Origin: Botryllus schlosseri
Lineage: Eukaryota
Reading direction: 5' to 3'
Length of the DNA stretch: 64,000 nucleotides
Assembly (NCBI GenBank): GCA_051294905.1
Contig: CM119379.1
Coordinates: 16,492,001 to 16,556,000, forward strand
Made by a program: the position numbers and the translations under genes. This document shows positions 1-9,463 of this stretch, piece after piece (positions within the stretch are counted from its first letter, which is position 1; each line of letters begins with the position of its first letter). The notes beneath the pieces were generated by a model. That model was not told the DNA's origin, ran no database searches, and worked only from the letters and a program-made list of their open reading frames with translations.

Positions 1-430
1 CGCAGTAGATGATGTGGTGATAGGACTTATCCTTAATGAGTATTCAGGGCAAATTAACACCGAAAACTTCGTTAAATATAGCCTTCAAAATACATATAGG
101 TTTAATTGTCCATGGGCGCCTAAATGACTGACACCGAATGTTCCTGTCTTGGCAATCTGAACTCCAGAAGACGAATTCCATCTGGCAGGGAAAAATTATA
201 TATCAGTGAGGAAATACCAATCTGAAATTGGTGCGTCTTTTAGTTAAGTACGATTGGGCGACAGGGATTTTCCTGTTGGGCGATATCCCCGTTGAGCAAT
301 TCTATATTTTTTGATATTGCAGACAGGGGGTCACGAAATAACATCATGCAACGAAGTCATACCAACGGGCTCGCCTGCCCGAATATGTTTAATTAGTAGT
401 AACGGGCCCTACAGTTTTTAAGAAACCTCA

Positions 431-615
431 CAATGTTCGCTTTAAGTTTTGATGAGTCTGCGCACACTCAACAGCTCATTGCGCTGACCCTTGGACAACA
501 GTGTGTAACGACTAAAAAAAGGTAATAACTTCGGATTTATTGTGCGCAACGTAGATTTCCTGTGCGCAGAGACCGTGTCAGCACTGCGCACGTGCGCAGC
601 TTAGAGGGAACATTG
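431..615. mobile_element. Short hAT-like MITE (185 bp)
   Basis: Inverted termini CAATGTTCGCTTTAAG (431-446) and CTTAGAGGGAACATTG (600-615), 14/16 complementary. Flanks aacctca / cacctca match at 6/7 and may be a TSD. Internal TGCGCA repeats. Confidence 0.65.
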
Positions 616-617
616 CA

Positions 618-1290
618 CCTCACTCAGCTCTACCGGTAAATGTGTTTACATGAGCAGAGAGAGGATAAAAATTGATCTCAATTTACATGCAATACCCGAT
701 GATATTGACCAATTTAATCATTAATTAGTGAAATTTTTCGCGCTTCGCGCGACTAGGTGAACATAGCTGCCTCAGTAAATGGACACCTAACGTAGATACC
801 TAATAGGCTATCAGCCAATAGCGGACAGCCTAATGGAGGTCTGGGAGTGAAGTCCCCCGGAAGTTTGGTTTATCACCCGATGGGGGCCCTGGACCAACGT
901 TTTTTGTTTGGAGGGGGGCTGACGAAGTGCTGTTACGGCCCTGGTAACGAATAATTGTACCTGCGGGCACGCCCGAAAATGTTTAATTATCAATTACGTG
1001 CCCTTTATTTTCCTATACAACAGCTCACTCAGTGCTACTGGTAAATCTGATTACGTGGGCTGAGAGGATAAAAAGTTTATAGCGAGTTATATATGTAATT
1101 ACCACCTTTCCATTCATGCATTATAGAAAATTTTGGTACCTAGGGCGACCAGGCCACACAAACTTTGCTGACCATCAAAATCACGATATGGGGTTCGTGG
1201 GGGCGAAGCCCTCAGAGGTTCAGTTTATCACGCTATGGGTGCGCAAGGCAATCGTTTTTAGGGGGGTTGACGAAGTGCTATTACGGCCCT
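618..1290. repeat. Diverged tandem duplication of a MITE-like segment ending in a CAGGGCCGTAA-type terminus
   Basis: 618-672 resembles 1025-1078 (ctcactcag..ggtaaat..gagaggataaaaa). 862-941 resembles 1217-1289 (tttatcac..ggggg[c/t]tgacgaagtgct[g/a]ttacggccct). Confidence 0.6.
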
Positions 1291-1920
1291 CCCTATTACT
1301 CATTGTCTTTATTACATTCCTTACAATATGAAGTTGGGGGGCGCTGGAGCACGATAATTTTTGAAAGGGGGCGCTGGAAGAAAAAAGGTTAAGAACCACT
1401 GGACTACACAATCCAATCTTGAAATTGATCAATACAGAGGCAGACCTAATGAAATAATATTTGCCATTTTCAATGATTTCCTGTAGCCTGTATAAAAAAT
1501 CCTTACCAGTCGCATGCATTGTAAAACAATATTAATCTCGCCGGGGTAGTCATGGGGTTGTAAGGCCCATATGTATCCACTATGCCACGACGGATTGGTG
1601 GCGTTACGTCATTTTTAAACGTCGTCGTTTCCCAAAACATTTTATACTGCCCTCCAAAATTTTCCTCGTATGGTGACACGTAAACGTACACGATGCAGAT
1701 TATATACATAAAATATTTAAAAAGCCCATACTCTTTACTTACGACATATAATATGCATTTCAAATATCACAAATGAAGACAGCTGAATAAAATGTATCGA
1801 GGTGGTACATCGGATATTGAAATATTGTATAGTAGTTGATCAGAGGGAAGAATCTAGCCAATCCAAAATATTCCTTTAAACAACGATTATACTCCCCCAA
1901 TATCTCATTAGTTGAGTGCG

Positions 1921-2342
1921 TAGGGTTGCATTTAAAACAAACGGTATTTTGAAACACATGTTTTAAACAGTGTTTTAAACAAAGGCCTTTTAAAAAAAAC
2001 GTTTTTTTTTAAGTTGTAAAATTATGCCATGATTGTGTAATACTTTCCAAAAACATGTTGTATGACCCACGGACAATTACCACCCGATATAGCTGACGTA
2101 CATCGATATGGGATGGTTGGAACCCTCAGAATAGTCGGTTTAACATTAATAGTACAAATATTTCGTCAAAGGAGCTATATTTACCCTATCTTTTCAATTG
2201 TCAATGTCAATCCACTATGACGTCACAATTGAATATTCGTGACGTCATGGCTTTAAAAAAACAATAAACAACATGTTTTAAATTACGGCCTTGTTGTAAA
2301 CATGTTTGTTTTGAATTGATTTTTGTTTTAAATGCAACCCTA
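1921..2342. mobile_element. hAT-like MITE with TIR TAGGGTTGCATTTAAAAC
   Basis: Perfect 18-bp TIRs at 1921-1938 and 2325-2342. Flanked by the direct repeat GAGTGCG (1914-1920 and 2343-2349). A partial second copy lies at 11881-12032. Confidence 0.85.
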
Positions 2343-4531
2343 GAGTGCGTATGTCTGGACGTAATATGTCATAGCGTTCGGCTTGACATGTTTTCAGGAC
2401 ATTTCTGTGTATTCAGCTTCCACTGGAGCGCTGATAGCAATTAAAAATAACTTCAAACTTGACAGACAGTTGTTACAATTTATTACAACTGAAATAAATA
2501 TCATTTTGTTTTTTCAGCTAACGCATCATCACGTTAGAACGACACATTATAATCATTTAGCAATATTGGATAATCATATCCAATCGCTAAAGCCAATATA
2601 TAGGCTTCATTTAAACTTGTGCTGCTTCGGATCGAACTATTTCGGTCTCACATGTTCGTCTTACGAACCATAGGTGTTTGTTAAATTCTTTCCCATCCTC
2701 ATAAATATATAATGGATAAGGCAGCACATTAATTTGACAGGTTTTAACTAAATGATCTGGCTTCTTTTCGATCTGAATTTGCTGCGAATGATATCTTAAA
2801 AACATTGAAAACTATTTGTGGACAAATTTCTGATTAAATATTCATGTATGTAAAAGTTTTTGCTAAGGAATATTTAAACAACTACTCAGTGTCCAGCAGG
2901 TCATTAATATCGACGCATGCGGTCATCTATTATTATCTTATAACTTATAGTATTTATATTCAAGCCAAGATATATCCTAGCTAGGAGAACCGGGTTGACA
3001 TTTAATGGATCAAAACACTATTAACCACATTAAACGACGCAGCCAAAGCAAAGTCATACCGTAGTTGGTCTCAAATCTAAGTTAATATCAAACTGTACTT
3101 ATAGTGGCGGTGTACCACTGCACTCAGTGATGGCTAAGTAGGATGCAAGGCCTCGTGATCAAGACCGATTTTGCAGTCCGCGTACAACCAGTGCTTCCTA
3201 ATTTTTCCTACACGCCACCCTTTCCCTATTTTGGTACGCTTGACTCCCGACTCACCCCTTACCCCAATATGACGGAGAACGAAAAGATTCAGAAAACCAT
3301 AAGAAAATAGCTTGTTATTTCTCATGGCAACTTCGCGTCGAATAAGCTATGGTTGCGCTGCGACAGTCGAGTAACAGATATGAAAAAGAAGGATATTAAA
3401 ATGCGAAAGCTATAGCCTACACACGAGCTGGTGTGAATTATAGTACCTTTAATTGAGACAGGCATATAGTTACGCATCAAGAAATAAAAAATTGTTATTC
3501 CCAAGTTTACGTTTAATATGAGGTTTCCGAAAGAATCATGGGAAGTCAAATACAGAAAATTTGTTGAAGGCGTTTGCTCACAAATTGTCTTAGACAACCC
3601 AAAGCAGGTAGCCAATTCGAACTATACCAGCATTATGATGTATACTATCTCTTGCATTCTCTCACTCTTGGGATCCCATGAAAAAAGAATTTTCGTAAAC
3701 TGCGTGGAAAATTTCACGACTAAAAATATAAACCGAATGCAATTTTTCATGTTCTGAATTCTCCTTGAGAATAAATGAACTATCGATCTGCAAACCGCAA
3801 TTTACAGAAGCTAACTCGCCATTACAAAAGTGTTTCATTGTGAGATGGAAAAGTTGGTCGCACCCCGTCGTTTCAACCGATGAGAACTACAGCCCGCGGA
3901 AAGACATTATGCACGTCGGGCAAAACAGCTCAAAGCGCAACCAATTGTTTGATTACAAGCGGCGAAATTGATTAACCTTGCAATGATTTTTTTAAACTGA
4001 ATATCGAATTTTATATCCCAAAATAGGGACTCGATCCCCGCCCACTGAATGAACGGAAGAGCGTTTATACTGATTATTATAGCATACGGTTGGACATTAC
4101 TCGAGTTCCAAGAAATTGTAATGGAAACTATGATGCGGATATACAATTAGGAAAAATTTATAATTCATTTTCGTGAAATTCCACATGAAGTAACGATGAT
4201 TCCCCAGGAGAAATTCTTTCCTGTTTTGGAACCGTTGGTATACGCACCACATACAAACCAATTCTACTCGTCGGCAGAGAATTGGAACCGTAGCGACCTG
4301 GTGTACAAGGCCATAGCAACTGATCGCCATATTATAATACTAAGCACAACGAGGCAAGGCTCCGCCGATTCTGTATCACGATCTTATATTTTGATGTGAC
4401 AAGAATTGTAAGTCACGATATGGCTGAAGCTGAATCAAATATGTACGAATGAGCAATTGAGCATGAGCAATCGAGCCGTATTCAAGTGATGGCAAAGATT
4501 TTAGCATTTATATTTTATACATATATTTCAG

Positions 4532-5653
4532 GTGATGTGAGATGGCAGGGTTTTAAATGCCATAACGGTGTCGTTGGTCACGCACCCGTACAGCAATCGG
4601 CGTATTTGAAAGGCTATTGCTGCGCGGTAATGAGAGGCGCGAACATTACGGACCGCAGATACAGGTGTGTACTTGTACATTGTTTTGTACATGCAAATAC
4701 CAGAAGCTTGCATGTAGGGTACGAGGAAATGCTAGGCAGGGTTTGAAAACGATTCCTCGTTACAGTACTTTCACGCAAGCGAAAATCGGATGTAACGAAA
4801 TAGGTCATCACATATGTACGCTGGAAGAAATGTACCGGGTGTGGGATAAGGTGAGATTGTGATGTTGTTGTTTATTGAACAAAATGATTTGGCGCTTATC
4901 GCCTGACGGCCTTTTGCACCGCGGTCAATGAAATTCATATTGTAGGCCTACAACACGAAAAAAGGAGGCCGTATGAAATAACGATAAAATATCAGAATGT
5001 AGTAGAAACACTCAGGTCATAAATGGCGCTTATGTGGATTCTGTAATTTCAACCTCATCACTTCTGAGTTACGTTACGTTCATTGTTCGTATCCGCCATA
5101 AATGTAATTTTATTAGTGTCGATGGATCAAGTATTCCACCTGTTACCAGTTTTTTAAAAATGTGAAATGGGACTTTGTTCTGGTTCAAGGCTTTTTCTCA
5201 ATGGTGGCGGCATTATGACTAATATTGTGCTAAAAGCCCTTACTATATATTAGCCCTACCTGCGTCGTAGCAAACTAATCAATGCCGGTGGTCACCATTG
5301 TTAGTTGTTGGCCATAGTTAGATACCGTTATATTAATGGTTCGCAACTCATTTACCACACAATATTAAACATTATATATTATAATTTGTATCCAGTCGAG
5401 CTACAAAAGCGACATGTGGGGATGGTTTCACGACGACCGTCACCTCGTGAAGATGGTGCACAGCTGCAATCCGAACCAGCAATTGTGGCCGGGCTACCAA
5501 TGCCTCCAAGGCCGACTGGTGACTTCGGAGATTATGACGTCTAACGTCCAAGAGAGCGCTTACTGTTGCCACACAAGTTCAACGAGTTCCAATGCTCGGC
5601 TAAACAGCTATTTTGTTTTGTTTTCATTTCTTATCGCTTTCGCTATGCGTTGA
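4532..5653 (+). CDS. 3' part of a tandem Link-module-like (C-type-lectin-fold), predicted GPI-anchored protein; 5' exons unresolved
   Basis: Exons 4532-4664, 4766-4850 and 5396-5653 join with GT-AG sites and matching phases (1, 2, 0) into ...DVRWQGFKCHNGVVGHAPVQQSAYLKGYCCAVMRGANITDRRYSTFTQAKIGCNEIGHHICTLEEMYRVWDKSSYKSDMWGWFHDDRHLVKMVHSCNPNQQLWPGYQCLQGRLVTSEIMTSNVQESAYCCHTSSTSSNARLNSYFVLFSFLIAFAMR*. The pattern Y.TF..A...C...G..[LI].T..[QE][LM]Y..W...GW...C...AYC is Link-like. The C-terminus is Ser-rich then hydrophobic, like a GPI signal. Confidence 0.7.
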
Positions 5654-8600
5654 CCAAATTTGATACCCATGCTTCCTATTATTGTTTGCTGTAAAATTGC
5701 GTTTAAGTTTTTAATATTTTCACCTCGTGAGAAGATGTTGGATCGTAAATAAATTCTATATATGTGATTTATGATGGTAGCATATTCTGCTACAAACCAG
5801 GGGTGTTTAAACTCAAAGACCACCGACCGAGTACAGTAACCTAAGCCTAATAGATCTACAGCCTACACGACAAATTCTATTTCAAATCTGCCAAGTAACG
5901 CAATCGGGGATGAAAATATGACTACAAATATTGCGATATTTCAACACTAAAATTTTTGATATGCTGATATCGAATATATATTTATTATATCTGTGGATAA
6001 TTCATTGATATTTTAGACGCCTCTGAGGAGCCTCAGATTGTAGACATAATATAGAAGTATACACAAGCGGTAACAGCAATACCGTATTGCAGTAAAAAGT
6101 ATAATAATTTGGATTATTATCCACAATTGCAATGAACGCAATGATTGAAGTGTCATATTGCTATTTGGATTCCCATTTTAAATAATTCATTTTTGGATAG
6201 CCTTCTTATAGTAAGCCCTGTGTAATATTCAATAATGCCCCATGCTGTCAATTTGATTTGACAGGACCGTGCTTATCACACACACACTCTTCAGCACGTC
6301 GGCGATCCTAATGTACATACGGACACCACTAGCATAAAACATTCATATTCGAATGGTCTCACCATGAAAATGATATTTCCTTTTTTCACACGATTATGTG
6401 CAAATAAGCGTATACCGGTCGATTGCGTGGCATATAGGGTCATATCAGGTCCCAAATTCGTTCTATTCAATTATGTATAGATTATTACATCACCGTCATG
6501 AAAGCGCAACGTGACCCACACTTTTTGTAGTATATGATTGCTCGTGCCCATAAAATCAAATCCTGATTCAAGACAGCGCGATTCGCTCGGATAACTATGC
6601 CTTCTATCGCATGATTAACACCGCTGTGCCATTTCAGCCCATGTAAGCTCCTGCAAAAAGACGCTACGTAGGGAAAGTCCTTGAAGACCAAAAATATCTA
6701 CATAATGTTCACCGAGGAGAGCATTCTAAATATCAACCGGGGAAAGTGTTAGCACTGCTTAGCAGGATATGGTTTTCTGGAGTACGTCACTTGCGTTGTA
6801 GGGATGAAAATTTTTGGACCGTATGATATTCTATCATAGACGTTACGTTAGAACGTCATACATACATTGTGGCATGGACAATTTTTCAACCCGACCTTGG
6901 AAGGGTCAGAGCACCTTCACGCATGCACCAAAGTATTGGCTAAAGATTAGCATAAACAGAGCATAAGATAGGGATTGCTTGCAGGATCGGATTACGACAT
7001 TTTAATTGTTCAACGTAAGACATTTCTGGATTCTGCAGAGTAAATGGATCTTAAGGTGTCGTATATCAATATTTTATCACCATACGCTGAAAGATTCGGG
7101 CCTCGATAGCACGCCATGCCGTCCATTCTTGGCACATGAACTTAAACAATAGATTATATTATTAACCTACACCTAAAGTTGTTGGGATAGGCTACTTTCC
7201 AATCTTGAAAAAAAAAAAATAGAAAACCGGACCGGAATCTGATGATGTGCCAAAATGAAAGTTTGAGAGGGTCTATAAATTTTCACCATTGATGTTACAC
7301 AATATGTGACACCCACTGTAGAATAGAAACCTCTGGTTTGATTTCCTTAGGTTGTATCCCAAAACCCAATTGCTGACAAGCAAAACCATTACCGGTGCCG
7401 AGCCAGGTACAGGGTTGCGACAGGTTACAAAGAGTATGTTCCCTTGCTTGGCTACACAGGCAGAGCGAATGATTTTTCAAGAGTTATCAATTCGTCGAGA
7501 TGATTTTGAGCAGATGAGTCAAAATAGTCATTGTTACTACTCAAGAAGAAGTAGAACCATAAATTTTTACTCGATTAGAAGTAGAAAATGGAAGGAATGA
7601 AAAGTAGGCCTACTCAAGTAAGTTCTTTCAAATAGTAGATTTCCTCGAGAGATCGCGTACTTTTAACAGTTAACAGGGGTTGGCTATGCTATTACTATCA
7701 TAATTGCAAGATGTATCTTTGCGACTAACGCAAAATGACTATAATGACACATATACGTACGATATTCGAAAATATACGCGGTTCCAACGACGATTTCACT
7801 CGTAAGAGTTATGCAAGCCTATTCAAGAACTAATTTCTACTTTTCAAAATCCAAATTATAAAAAGCAAGTGGTAGGACTGGGCAAAATCCGTCGAGTCGA
7901 GCATCTCTCATTATGACGAGTTCAACTATATGAACCTTTTAGGCGACCACAAAGAATATAATGCAGTTCTTGATCGCATTAAAGATATACCTGTTTCATT
8001 GCAATTTGTGACAATGCCGCGGGTTGAGCAGGAGTTCACAGAAACGCCATTTCCACTAGCGTGCGAGCTGCGAAGCTTTGTACTACATGTTTCGTATGCT
8101 GTGGCCTGTGATACGACCATTCGAGGTTAAGACTTTCTTCCATTCGAATCATTGTGTCCAGCTCTATATACTCATTAGTCGATAAATTACTTATACGCCA
8201 CCGTGCAAATTGAATTTTGTAAATACGCGGTTACAACATGTCAAACCTCATATCCCACAACAAATTTAATCAGACGTAGGGAGGGATTTGCATTTGCTCT
8301 GATCGGAATACATATTTATGAAAATGGAAAAGCTTTAGCTCTGAATGTCGAGATTATAAATCGAGTTGCGGGTCCGCAGAATTTATTCCGTTTAAAGGAC
8401 CTCGTAAATATAATCATGAAGCAGGTCGATGGTTACTCGAAACTGTAATCTAAGTCTTCAGAAATACCGATTTCACCAATCACCGTTCAGATATATCGGA
8501 TTATTTTCATCAAAGACTACCTTCCCGCAACATACATGCGCTTATCTATATGATGATAAGCTTTACATTATTATATTGCCGATACCAAAAATCGATGAGG

Positions 8601-8690
8601 CGTATGGGATATGGCGCATCAAATAGACTGGCAAGTCGGTACGATACATTCGTGGCTGATTGAAGGAAAAAAAGAAAACAATTACCGGAG

Positions 8691-8792
8691 TTATATATAA
8701 CAGGTGGATCGAAAGTGTCCCGTTCATATCGTGGAAAGATCTAGAGTTTTACGGGATTGAATGCTAGAATCTTTATAGTCACATCCGCAAAG
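8691..8792 (+). promoter_or_regulatory. Candidate TATA box and non-coding first exon of the galanin-like gene
   Basis: TTATATATAA at 8691-8700 is followed by a strong donor AAAG|GTGAGA at 8793 and closed reading frames. It lies upstream of the acceptor TTTCAG at 9461. Assignment to this gene is inference. Confidence 0.3.
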
Positions 8793-9463
8793 GTGAGAAT
8801 ACTTGAAAATATCTTCGTTATTTGACATTGAATTCGGACCACCGACTGGATGTAGCCAGGATTGAAGTTTCGGGAGGGAAAGACAAATTAGGATATTCAG
8901 TGACGTATGTCCATTGTGACGTAATCAATATAAATAACGTCCCACTGGGGGTATTTGTACCATGATTTCATGACTGACCAAAAATCAATTTCCCGGACGA
9001 CATCGATATTGACAACTATATAGCTATAGTTTCCATATCGGCCCGCAAATGTTTTTTATGTTGTTTTGTGAGTCGATGTCATAATCATATATAGAGCGAG
9101 ATAAAGACAATCGCCACAATCTGTACAAGCAATGAAACAAAAGAAAAGGTCGACTTAAATGAGAATTGTTAGCGTTTAATATGGGACTCGCACACGTGAT
9201 AAAATCTAAAACCCGAATCATTAAACATAAATTAAAATCAATTCTAACCGATATTAGATAGTTTTATATTATTGGCATCAATTCATTGAATTCAATTTAT
9301 TCAGTAACTCTATGTCGTCCTCAGCGTAAATTTCTGAAAGTGTGAGCTCCATGCTATCGTGTATCTTACTAAAACCATTGCATAATGTGCTGTTTTTCGA
9401 TACCCTCCATAGAGACATTTATCGACATCGACAGACAAGGTTTTCACTTGCATTGTTTCAGAA

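What the first reader, a model, noticed from the sequence alone, without database searches (positions are those of the whole stretch)
4532..5653. Cryptic tandem Link-module-like, GPI-anchored protein
Seen: three phase-compatible exons encode the tail of one repeat (RWQGFKC..GYCC) and a complete second repeat (YSTFTQAKIGC..ICTLEEMYRVW..WGW..SC..LWPGYQC..SAYCC), then a GPI-like tail. Known: Link modules (TSG-6, CD44, HAPLN, lecticans) share Y.LT..EA...C...G..LAT..QL..AW...GW...C...AYC, and the reported Ciona Link protein binds heparin rather than hyaluronan. Inference: this is a divergent six-cysteine, tandem, surface-anchored Link-like receptor with an unknown glycan ligand. No ORF-level annotation would reveal it.
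Basis: partly seen in the sequence, partly recalled or inferred. Interest (0 to 1): 0.75.

Follow-up and report, generated by a model that had tools for sequence, protein, structure and literature searches.

The report
Divergent tandem Link-module sea-squirt surface protein
The three exons are real and transcribed, but they are only the tail end of a 24.6-kb sea-squirt gene for a large, probably lipid-anchored surface protein that ends in two very divergent copies of the Link sugar-binding fold, a family found so far only in sea squirts, their relatives and unlabelled marine samples, and not yet studied.

Summary
Observation confirmed. Exons 4532-4664, 4766-4850 and 5396-5653 have canonical splice sites. 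Spliced contigs from three runs in three studies show both junctions.

Interpretation partly supported. The peptide is the end of one six-cysteine repeat, a full second repeat and a GPI-signal-like tail.
- 13 of 16 orthologous repeats hit Pfam Xlink and no other family repeatedly.
- Profile comparison with this genome's canonical Xlink modules gives 91.6% probability (shuffled controls at most 2.8%).
- A confident AlphaFold model of the Styela clava orthologue's repeat 2 (pLDDT 91.6) matches Link modules first in every library. The only four PDB chains with Z of 8 or more are aggrecan G1, two LYVE-1 entries and TSG-6.

- These are the last three of at least 17 coding exons.
- The protein runs signal peptide, FG-GAP beta-propeller, proline-rich stalk, two Link-like modules, hydrophobic tail.
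- Repeat 1's head lies 553 nt upstream of the window.
- Orthologues are already predicted as "uncharacterized protein" in Styela, Clavelina and Ciona, so annotation does reveal the gene.
- The canonical Link cysteine pattern is not kept.
- The ligand is unknown, and net charge is not conserved.

Verdict: a new variant of a known kind, of moderate interest.

The parts
1..4531 (+). 3' part of the 5,084-nt phase-1 intron between the exon that encodes the head of repeat 1 (C9:16491241-16491447, outside the window) and the exon at 4532. It holds multi-copy repeat sequence at about 1-1400 and 1900-2400.
   Evidence: The loose 5' ends of the spliced contigs at 4531 map to L009:9417-9446, followed by G|GTATGG. 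The in-frame join was checked.
4532..4664 (+). Third-from-last coding exon. 4532-4623 encodes the last 30 residues of Link-like repeat 1 (DVRWQGFKC...GYCC). 4624-4664 encodes the first residues of repeat 2 (AVMRGANITDRRY, with an N-glycosylation sequon NIT).
4665..4765 (+). Intron of 101 nt, GT..AG, phase 2.
   Evidence: Joint seen in contigs of X1, X5 and X7.
4766..4850 (+). Second-from-last coding exon. It encodes helix 1, the strand and helix 2 of repeat 2 (TFTQAKIGCNEIGHHICTLEEMYRVWDK).
   Evidence: Alone it hits Pfam Xlink profile positions 14-40 (E 0.054, 14.2 bits, below the cut-off).
4851..5395 (+). Intron of 545 nt, GT..AG, phase 0. Its position is conserved in another tunicate genome (WDE|SSYK in L018). 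It contains a dispersed repeat at about 4855-5032.
5396..5569 (+). Last coding exon, first part. It encodes the C-terminal 58 residues of repeat 2 (SSYKSDMWGWF ... SAYCC), holding four of the six cysteines.
   Evidence: phmmer finds tunicate orthologues at E 8e-27 to 5e-13. The invariant columns are kept.
5570..5653 (+). GPI-signal-like tail (HTSSTSSNARLNSY + FVLFSFLIAFAMR) and the TGA stop at 5651-5653.
   Evidence: A Ser/Asn/Ala-rich stretch is followed by a 13-residue hydrophobic end with no cytoplasmic tail. The same layout is found in all 8 orthologous proteins examined.
5654..5824 (+). 3' untranslated region with AATAAA at 5748-5753. The exact 3' end is not determined.
   Evidence: Contigs end at 5674 (X1, X5) or 5824 (X7).

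Best explanation
The finding is the 3' end of a single-copy, transcribed ascidian gene. The gene has at least 17 coding exons and runs from the ATG at C9:16473077 to the stop at window 5653. The encoded secretory glycoprotein has five parts: a signal peptide, a roughly 390-aa FG-GAP/VCBS beta-propeller, a long proline/serine/glycine/asparagine-rich stalk, two tandem modules of about 100 aa, and a C-terminal GPI-attachment-type signal. The two modules are very divergent members of the Link-module branch of the C-type-lectin-like fold. Each keeps the first and last Link cysteines and the GW core. Each has lost the canonical second cysteine and gained three new invariant ones, giving six in all. 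Shown here: exon structure, transcription, orthology, domain order, and sequence and fold similarity to Link modules. Inferred: the protein is GPI-anchored on the cell surface. Also inferred: the membrane-proximal Link-like pair acts as a paired carbohydrate-binding unit, as the tandem Link modules of aggrecan and HAPLN do. The ligand would be a tunicate matrix polysaccharide, sulfated or neutral, and not hyaluronan, which tunicates are reported not to make. The propeller on its stalk would offer a second, distal binding surface. Odds: about 0.85 for the anatomy and Link-fold homology, about 0.7 for the GPI anchor, and about 0.35 for glycan binding as the function of the pair.
For: Splicing and transcription:. 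Whole-gene colinearity with P0001 and P0011 from residue 1 to the end at one locus. In-frame join of the last five exons. Orthologues with the same architecture in Styela clava, Clavelina lepadiformis, Ciona intestinalis and four unnamed sources. Pfam: FG-GAP_3 scores 33-46 bits (cut-off 26.9) in every full-length orthologue. Xlink scores 29.1 bits in Styela (cut-off 27) and 14.8-25.2 bits in the others. 13 of 16 single repeats hit Xlink, and no other family recurs. hhalign of the 16-repeat profile against three canonical Xlink modules of the same genome gives probability 91.6%, E 8e-7 over 60 columns. The best of 60 column-shuffled controls reaches 2.8%. AlphaFold2 on repeat 2 of the Styela orthologue gives pLDDT 91.6 and pTM 0.82. 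Foldseek against PDB ranks LYVE-1, aggrecan G1, TSG-6 and CD44 with probability 1.00 and TM 0.59-0.71, while C-type lectins reach TM 0.40-0.53. The top 28 Swiss-Prot AFDB hits and all 30 listed AFDB-cluster rows that carry a name are Link modules or Link-family proteins. An unbiased VIA-align search of 48,161 chains finds only four with Z of 8 or more, all Link modules: aggrecan G1 at 10.1, LYVE-1 at 9.7 and 9.6, TSG-6 at 8.9. The tandem model matches the tandem Link pair of aggrecan G1 at Foldseek E 4.9e-5. All nine invariant columns (A, 6 C, W, G) are kept in both repeats of the window's gene. The tail layout is conserved.
Against: The window's own spliced peptide could not be given to Pfam or AlphaFold, which accept contiguous references only. 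The fold evidence therefore rests on an orthologue that is 59% identical. Most orthologues fall below Pfam's Xlink cut-off, and the match covers only profile positions of about 10 to 62-73. The sequence-profile search of PDB is not significant (aggrecan E 0.03-0.4). The canonical Link disulfide pattern is not kept. Repeat pI ranges from 4.4 to 9.0 with no conserved positive charge, which argues against a heparin-type electrostatic site. No GPI or signal-peptide predictor was available. No binding data exist. The tandem model is only moderately confident (pLDDT 70.5), so how the two modules pack is unknown.
Confidence: 0.75

Rival explanations
1. The Link-fold pair has lost carbohydrate binding. 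It serves instead as a protein-binding or purely structural base next to the membrane, as many C-type-lectin-like domains of NK receptors do. The FG-GAP propeller would then be the functional ligand-binding head.
For: Net charge is not conserved across orthologues (pI 4.4-9.0). The cysteine pattern is rebuilt. The propeller is the best-conserved part of the protein, at 57-90% identity per exon against 51-58% for the last three exons. Protein-binding CTLDs (CD94/NKG2A, KLRG1, intimin) also appear in the fold lists at Z 6-7.5.
Against: The nearest structures by every search are glycan-binding Link modules. The aggrecan G1 tandem is the top hit for the tandem model. Conserved exposed aromatic candidates (WGW, W.GY) are compatible with sugar stacking, but this was not tested.
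Confidence: 0.3
2. The hydrophobic C-terminus is a transmembrane anchor (type I protein with almost no cytoplasmic tail) and not a GPI-attachment signal.
For: No dedicated predictor was run. The hydrophobic stretch reaches 16-18 residues in three orthologues (P0001, P0027, P0030).
Against: In the window and in all 8 orthologous proteins examined, the stretch is only 11-18 residues. It runs to within a few residues of the C-terminus with no basic stop-transfer tail. It is preceded by a Ser/Asn/Gly/Ala-rich segment at the spacing expected for an omega site.
Confidence: 0.15
3. The repeats are an independent short offshoot of the C-type-lectin-like superfamily. Their likeness to Link modules would reflect only shared superfamily ancestry or convergence on a minimal fold, not membership of the Link lineage.
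For: The canonical Link C2-C3 disulfide is missing. Pfam coverage stops at profile positions 57-73 of 92 in every hit. The intron inside repeat 2 lies within one codon of the intron in this genome's C7 Xlink modules but in a different phase (0 against 2), so it is not clearly shared.
Against: No repeat hits Pfam Lectin_C at E of 1 or less, while 13 of 16 hit Xlink. The hhalign probability against bona fide Xlink modules is 91.6% with clean controls. Link modules outrank all CTLDs by 1.5-3 Z units and by TM score.
Confidence: 0.12
4. The three exons, plus one or two upstream exons, are also expressed from an internal promoter as a short stand-alone Link-only protein, roughly.
For: The assembled contigs are only 850-975 nt long. 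One environmental relative (P0005, 305 aa) starts with Met inside the stalk.
Against: Such a product would lack a signal peptide. P0005 comes from a 1,137-nt contig and is most simply a 5'-truncated transcript. The contigs extend 327-352 nt 5' of 4531, further than the 207-nt repeat-1 head exon, so they run on into the stalk exons. All full-length orthologues carry the propeller.
Confidence: 0.06

Closest known systems
Link modules (Pfam PF00193 Xlink): TSG-6, CD44, LYVE-1, and the tandem pairs of HAPLN1-4 and of the G1 domains of aggrecan, versican and brevican
   Same: Module of about 100 aa with two helices and two sheets. It keeps the A...C motif of helix 1, the L(A/C)(T/S)..(E/Q)L motif of helix 2, the GW core and the final (A/G)(Y/F)C. 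The tandem arrangement resembles G1/HAPLN. These are the best structural matches in every library.
   Different: There are six invariant cysteines instead of four. The canonical cysteine before GW is absent, a new cysteine replaces the Ala of 'LAT', and the module ends in CC. Scores fall below Pfam's cut-off in most species. No Ig, CUB, EGF or sushi partners are present. Net charge is not basic. The ligand is unknown.
Canonical ascidian Xlink proteins: the Ciona Xlink protein of Yoneda et al. 2010 (J Mol Evol 71:51; heparin-binding, not hyaluronan-binding), and Ciona A0A1W3JP67 (297 aa, Xlink plus F5/8 type C)
   Same: Tunicate proteins with the Link fold in an animal reported to lack hyaluronan.
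   Different: They are a different gene family. This genome has its own canonical modules on C2 and C7 that score 25.9-35.6 bits per half-module exon (one weaker first-half exon at 19.3), whereas the finding's exons are not listed in the same scan. The orthologue of the finding in Ciona is LOC100176022 (800 aa), which carries no precomputed Xlink annotation. The Yoneda paper itself was not available, so whether A0A1W3JP67 is their protein rests on inference.
Styela clava LOC120333741, Clavelina lepadiformis LOC143446302 and Ciona intestinalis LOC100176022 (all 'uncharacterized protein')
   Same: Orthologues with an identical domain order and tail. Identity to the window's C-terminal peptide is 59% for Styela. 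All invariant residues are shared.
   Different: They come from other species. None has a described function, and no paper in the searchable library names them.
FG-GAP / VCBS beta-propeller proteins (integrin alpha head, CRTAC1, ITFG1; roughly 400-aa FG-GAP proteins of molluscs and bacteria)
   Same: The N-terminal 390 aa hit PF13517/PF01839 and carry D.N.DG..D-type calcium-loop motifs. The language-model neighbours are FG-GAP families.
   Different: To my knowledge, none of these combines the propeller with Link modules and a GPI-type tail. This is recollection, not a database survey.
C-type lectin domains (Pfam PF00059)
   Same: Same superfold. They score Z 5.4-7.3 and TM 0.40-0.53.
   Different: The long-loop region is absent. 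There is no Lectin_C Pfam hit. They rank lower than Link modules throughout.

Membership tests
Link module (Pfam PF00193 Xlink) | Pfam Xlink HMM score at or above the curated cut-off of 27 bits | tested here: inconclusive
   Window exon 2 alone scores 14.2 bits, E 0.054. The exons are not listed in the genome-wide six-frame scan. The Styela orthologue scores 29.1 bits (above the cut-off) and seven others 14.8-25.2 bits. 13 of 16 single repeats hit Xlink at E of 1 or less. The spliced window peptide could not be submitted.
Link module (Pfam PF00193 Xlink) | Profile-level similarity to bona fide Link modules | tested here: met
   hhalign of A3 against three canonical Xlink modules of the same genome gives probability 91.6%, E 8e-7. 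Sixty column-shuffled controls reach at most 2.8% and the reversed control 0.7%.
Link module (Pfam PF00193 Xlink) | Compact alpha/beta Link fold (about 100 aa, two helices, two sheets, no long-loop region) | tested here: met
   The model of the orthologue's repeat 2 has pLDDT 91.6. The only four PDB representatives with Z of 8 or more are Link modules. TM 0.59-0.71 to TSG-6, LYVE-1, aggrecan and CD44. The AFDB lists are all Link. Caveat: the model is of the orthologue, not of the window's peptide.
Link module (Pfam PF00193 Xlink) | Four conserved cysteines forming the C1-C4 and C2-C3 disulfides | tested here: not met
   The C1 (helix 1) and C4 (final YC) columns are kept. The cysteine before GW is absent in all 18 repeats. 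Three extra invariant cysteines are present. Disulfide pairing itself was not determined.
Link module (Pfam PF00193 Xlink) | Hyaluronan- or glycosaminoglycan-contact residues and actual binding | not testable with these tools
   No structure-based residue alignment or binding assay was available. Bulk charge is not conserved.
GPI-anchored surface proteins | C-terminal signal: small omega-region residues, a short polar spacer, and a hydrophobic stretch running to the C-terminus with no cytoplasmic tail | tested here: met
   A heuristic hydropathy and composition check was run on the window and 8 orthologues. The hydrophobic end is 11-18 residues long and is preceded by Ser/Asn/Gly/Ala-rich segments. 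No dedicated GPI predictor was available.
GPI-anchored surface proteins | N-terminal signal peptide | tested here: inconclusive
   Exon 1 (C9:16473077-16473196) translates to MQLITNLVALFWITNTCSG|AFGPK, which aligns with the orthologues' N-termini. It was judged by eye; no predictor was run.
FG-GAP / VCBS beta-propeller | Pfam PF13517 above its cut-off of 26.9 bits, with repeated calcium-loop motifs | tested here: met
   Orthologues score 33.4-46.4 bits. This genome's exons are colinear with them at 57-90% identity. The window itself holds none of these exons.
C-type lectin domain (Pfam PF00059) | Lectin_C HMM hit and a long-loop region with calcium and sugar motifs | tested here: not met
   No Lectin_C hit at E of 1 or less in any of 16 repeats. 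At about 100 aa the domain is too short for a long loop. CTLD structures rank below Link modules.

The most novel reading that the evidence does not exclude
Tunicates possess a second, lineage-specific branch of the Link-module family that domain-based surveys have not flagged in Ciona. It is fused to an integrin-like FG-GAP propeller and tethered by GPI. Its rebuilt six-cysteine modules would recognise a tunicate-specific matrix polysaccharide (tunic cellulose, or the unusual sulfated dermatan or heparan chains of ascidians). That would physically couple epidermal or blood-cell surfaces to the tunic or basement matrix.
Probability: 0.15. Interest if true: 0.7.

Novelty: new variant of a known kind. 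Interest (0 to 1): 0.45.

Why it matters
Link modules are the hyaluronan-binding units of vertebrate cartilage, brain matrix and leukocyte homing. Their origin is usually traced through a handful of invertebrate chordate genes. The papers read here describe the Ciona Xlink protein as binding heparin and not hyaluronan.

This gene shows that tunicates carry an additional, much more divergent Link lineage. It has a new cysteine framework and an unseen domain combination: FG-GAP propeller, stalk, two Link modules and a GPI-type tail. It falls below domain-database thresholds in most species, so domain-shuffling surveys can be expected to miss it.

It gives a concrete single-copy candidate, with a Ciona orthologue, for testing what the Link fold bound in a hyaluronan-free chordate. 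It does not reveal a new kind of molecular system.

Tried and rejected
1. tblastn of the spliced peptide against the whole window, looking for the head of repeat 1: nothing found. It lies upstream of the window.
2. Pfam on the three exon translations separately: only exon 2 gave a weak Xlink hit. Exons 1 and 3 gave none.
3. Sequence profiles of the repeats against PDB sequences: aggrecan is top but not significant, at E 0.4 with 10 rows and 0.033 with 16 rows. TSG-6 scored E 0.95.
4. Shared intron position as a homology marker. The intron in repeat 2 (K|S, phase 0) lies within one codon of the intron in the C7 Xlink modules (phase 2). It differs from the C2 module's intron and from repeat 1, which has none there. 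Inconclusive.
5. Net charge and pI as a proxy for heparin-type binding: no conserved basic character.
6. Literature. Yoneda 2010 and Kawashima 2009 are not held. No paper names LOC100176022, LOC120333741 or LOC143446302. A search for 'Ci-Link1' found nothing. That gene name is my recollection and is unverified.
7. Phmmer of the propeller against PDB sequences: only chance antibody hits.
8. The scan's own notes: nothing on FG-GAP or Link in this genome.
9. The weak Xlink hit on C14 looks like an ordinary C-type lectin exon and was dropped.
10. The stalk exons between about C9:16485906 and 16489546 were not resolved, so no full coding sequence or exact protein length is given.
Full report

The window is C9:16492001-16556000 of a 495.5-Mb genome.

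The three stretches 4532-4664, 4766-4850 and 5396-5653 each start after AG and end before GT. Joined, they give one open frame of 157 codons that ends at the TGA at 5651-5653. Intron phases are 1, 2 and 0.

I laid four public runs on window 1-6000.
- Both junctions appear as GT..AG joints inside single spliced contigs of 850, 850 and 975 nt. These come from three runs in three different studies.
- Each joint has 88 letters on its shorter side.
- A bulk RNA-seq run of raw reads covers exon 3 at low depth.

The contigs carry 327-352 further letters 5' of 4531. Their last 30 letters match L009:9417-9446 with one mismatch, and G|GTATGG follows. The next exon upstream therefore ends at C9:16491447, 553 nt before the window begins.

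**2. What the exons belong to**

A phmmer search of 1.84 billion representatives with exon 3 found a handful of proteins. All of them carry the match at their extreme C-terminus, twice over. The list includes P0001 (1001 aa), P0002, P0003 and P0005.

P0001 is Styela clava 'uncharacterized protein LOC120333741'. Further searches added P0011 (861 aa, the closest relative), Clavelina lepadiformis LOC143446302, Ciona intestinalis LOC100176022, and two unnamed proteins.

All full-length members share one plan:
- a signal peptide;
- about 390 aa that hit Pfam FG-GAP_3 above its cut-off (33-46 bits against 26.9);
- a long proline/glycine/serine/asparagine-rich stretch of very variable length;
- two repeats of 97-100 aa;
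- a short hydrophobic end.

Searching this genome with P0001 hits one locus only. That locus is colinear from residue 39 to 995. tblastn with P0011 extends the match to the initiator Met at C9:16473077.

The gene has at least 17 coding exons spanning 24,577 nt from ATG to stop. The last five exons join in frame. The finding is therefore the last three exons of a large gene.

The 'tail of one repeat' is completed by an intact exon just outside the window. That exon encodes APPNLILSITPDSYRYQEEAADACTFEDKVLCSLMQLESATSAGELPPIEWGWFETPGRAAEIKNCIPG.

The spliced window peptide is 64% identical to P0011 (E 2e-81) and 59% identical to the Styela protein.

**3. Are the repeats Link modules? Sequence evidence**

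- Exon 2 alone gives a weak Xlink hit: E 0.054, 14.2 bits, profile positions 14-40.
- The Styela orthologue passes Pfam's own cut-off (29.1 against 27 bits). The others score 14.8-25.2 bits.
- When 16 repeats from eight orthologues are scanned one by one, 13 hit Xlink. The only other family seen is a single stray hit.
- This genome also has canonical Xlink modules on C2 and C7. Their half-module exons score 25.9-35.6 bits each, apart from one weaker first-half exon at 19.3 bits. The finding's exons do not appear in that scan.
- I spliced three of those canonical modules in a script and compared them with the 16-repeat profile using hhalign. The result was probability 91.6%, E 8e-7, over 60 aligned columns covering helix 1, helix 2 and the GW core.
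- Sixty column-shuffled controls reached at most 2.8%, and the reversed control 0.7%.
- Profile searches of PDB sequences put aggrecan first and TSG-6 third, but neither is significant.

**4. Are the repeats Link modules? Fold evidence**

The tandem model (pLDDT 70.5) has the pattern strand, helix, strand, helix, then four or five strands, twice over. Its best Foldseek match is the tandem Link pair of the aggrecan G1 domain at E 4.9e-5. VIA-align gives TSG-6 Z 10.1 (rmsd 2.4 Å, 79 of 85 residues), aggrecan 10.1, LYVE-1 9.5 and CD44 7.8.

Repeat 2 modelled alone is confident, with pLDDT 91.6 and pTM 0.82. Four searches agree on it.
- Foldseek against PDB ranks LYVE-1, aggrecan, TSG-6 and CD44 at probability 1.00 and TM 0.59-0.71. 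C-type lectins reach TM 0.40-0.53.
- The first 28 Swiss-Prot AFDB hits are Link modules of HAPLN1-4, LYVE-1, brevican, aggrecan, versican and stabilin-2. Each is aligned exactly over the Link range.
- All named rows among the top 30 AFDB clusters are Link modules or Link-family proteins.
- A search that does not depend on Foldseek, over 48,161 PDB representatives, finds only four chains with Z of 8 or more. All four are Link modules.

**5. How it differs from canonical Link modules**

Nine columns are invariant in all 18 repeats, including both repeats of this gene. They are the Ala and Cys of helix 1, a Cys where canonical modules have the Ala of 'LAT', the first Trp of WGW, a Cys after the fourth strand, the Gly and Cys of W.GY.C, and a terminal CC.

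The alignments to aggrecan and to the canonical ascidian modules show that the cysteine which normally precedes GW is absent.

The defining C1-C4 plus C2-C3 pattern is therefore not kept. Six cysteines probably form three disulfides, but their pairing was not determined.

The Pfam match never extends beyond profile position 73 of 92. For these reasons I call the repeats a divergent branch of the Link lineage and not ordinary members.

**6. The tail**

After the final CC the window encodes HTSSTSSNARLNSY followed by FVLFSFLIAFAMR and a stop.

The same layout is seen in all eight orthologous proteins examined:
- a segment rich in Ser, Asn, Gly and Ala;
- then 11-18 hydrophobic residues;
- the hydrophobic stretch runs to within a few residues of the C-terminus;
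- there is no basic cytoplasmic tail.

With the N-terminal signal peptide, this is the classical arrangement of a GPI-attachment signal. No dedicated predictor was available, so the anchor is inferred.

**7. Mechanism**

Shown: a secretory, multi-domain protein whose last 200 structured residues are a pair of Link-fold modules next to the membrane-attachment signal.

Inferred: it sits on the cell surface by GPI, with the propeller held away from the membrane on a probably glycosylated stalk. The Link pair would form one binding unit like the paired modules of G1 and HAPLN.

Two reviews state that tunicates make no hyaluronan and that the Ciona Xlink domain binds heparin instead (PMC8508827, PMC12383584). 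Hyaluronan is therefore an unlikely ligand.

The repeats have no conserved positive charge; pI runs from 4.4 to 9.0. This weakens a simple heparin-type model. It leaves a neutral or specifically sulfated tunicate polysaccharide, or a protein partner, as candidates. I put glycan binding at about 0.35 and a non-lectin role at about 0.3.

**8. Relation to what is known, and novelty**

The only Ciona PF00193 protein listed in the supplement of PMC12383584 is a 297-aa Xlink plus F5/8-type-C protein. That is a different gene from Ciona LOC100176022, the orthologue of this gene, which carries no precomputed Xlink annotation.

No paper in the searchable library names any of the three annotated orthologues.

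The family has been seen only in tunicates and in unlabelled marine assemblies.

Gene predictors do find the gene in other species, and Pfam flags the Styela protein, so it is not invisible to annotation.

I rate it a new variant of a known kind: a Link-lineage module with a rebuilt cysteine framework, in a domain combination I know from no other protein. Interest is moderate.

**9. Limits**

- The fold evidence rests on an orthologue.
- The stalk exons and the exact protein length are unresolved.
- The 3' end is only bracketed, at 5674 to 5824.
- The primary Ciona papers could not be read.
- Nothing here tests binding.

Noticed in passing
window 4855-5032: A dispersed repeat of about 170 nt sits inside the 545-nt intron. 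At least 39 other copies lie on many chromosomes at 72-94% identity. It looks like a SINE or MITE but was not classified.
   Followed up: no
window 1-1400 and 1900-2400: Contig depths run into the thousands, with many short contigs, odd joints and loose ends in all four runs. This is multi-copy, probably transposon-derived sequence inside the 5,084-nt intron upstream of exon 4532.
   Followed up: no
G000:C2:2470484-2472547 (L013, L011); G000:C7:3568454-3569358 and 3577590-3579392 (L014, L015): These are canonical Xlink modules of the same genome: one on C2 and two in tandem on C7. Most of their half-module exons score above Pfam's cut-off. Each module is split by a phase-2 intron shortly before the C.(C)GW motif. 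The rest of these genes was not examined.
   Followed up: partly
L017, L018 (ENA assembly ERZ25067590, contigs of 0.55 and 1.07 Mb): An assembly filed as a metagenome holds two long haplotig-like contigs with the orthologous last exons of this gene. The WDE|SSYK intron is conserved and the introns are much shorter. An unlabelled tunicate genome appears to be inside it.
   Followed up: partly
G000:C14:17403286-17403411 (-), L016: A weak Xlink hit (19.7 bits) translates to YRASNCYDYLLSREEVVYAEAQTACENLGGTLAQV. It reads like the start of an ordinary C-type lectin domain and not a Link module.
   Followed up: partly
L009:8125-8434, 8561-8764, 9241-9447 (C9:16490125-16491447): The stalk and repeat-1 exons just upstream of the window are all flanked by phase-1 introns. 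That is the symmetric phase typical of shuffled extracellular modules.
   Followed up: partly
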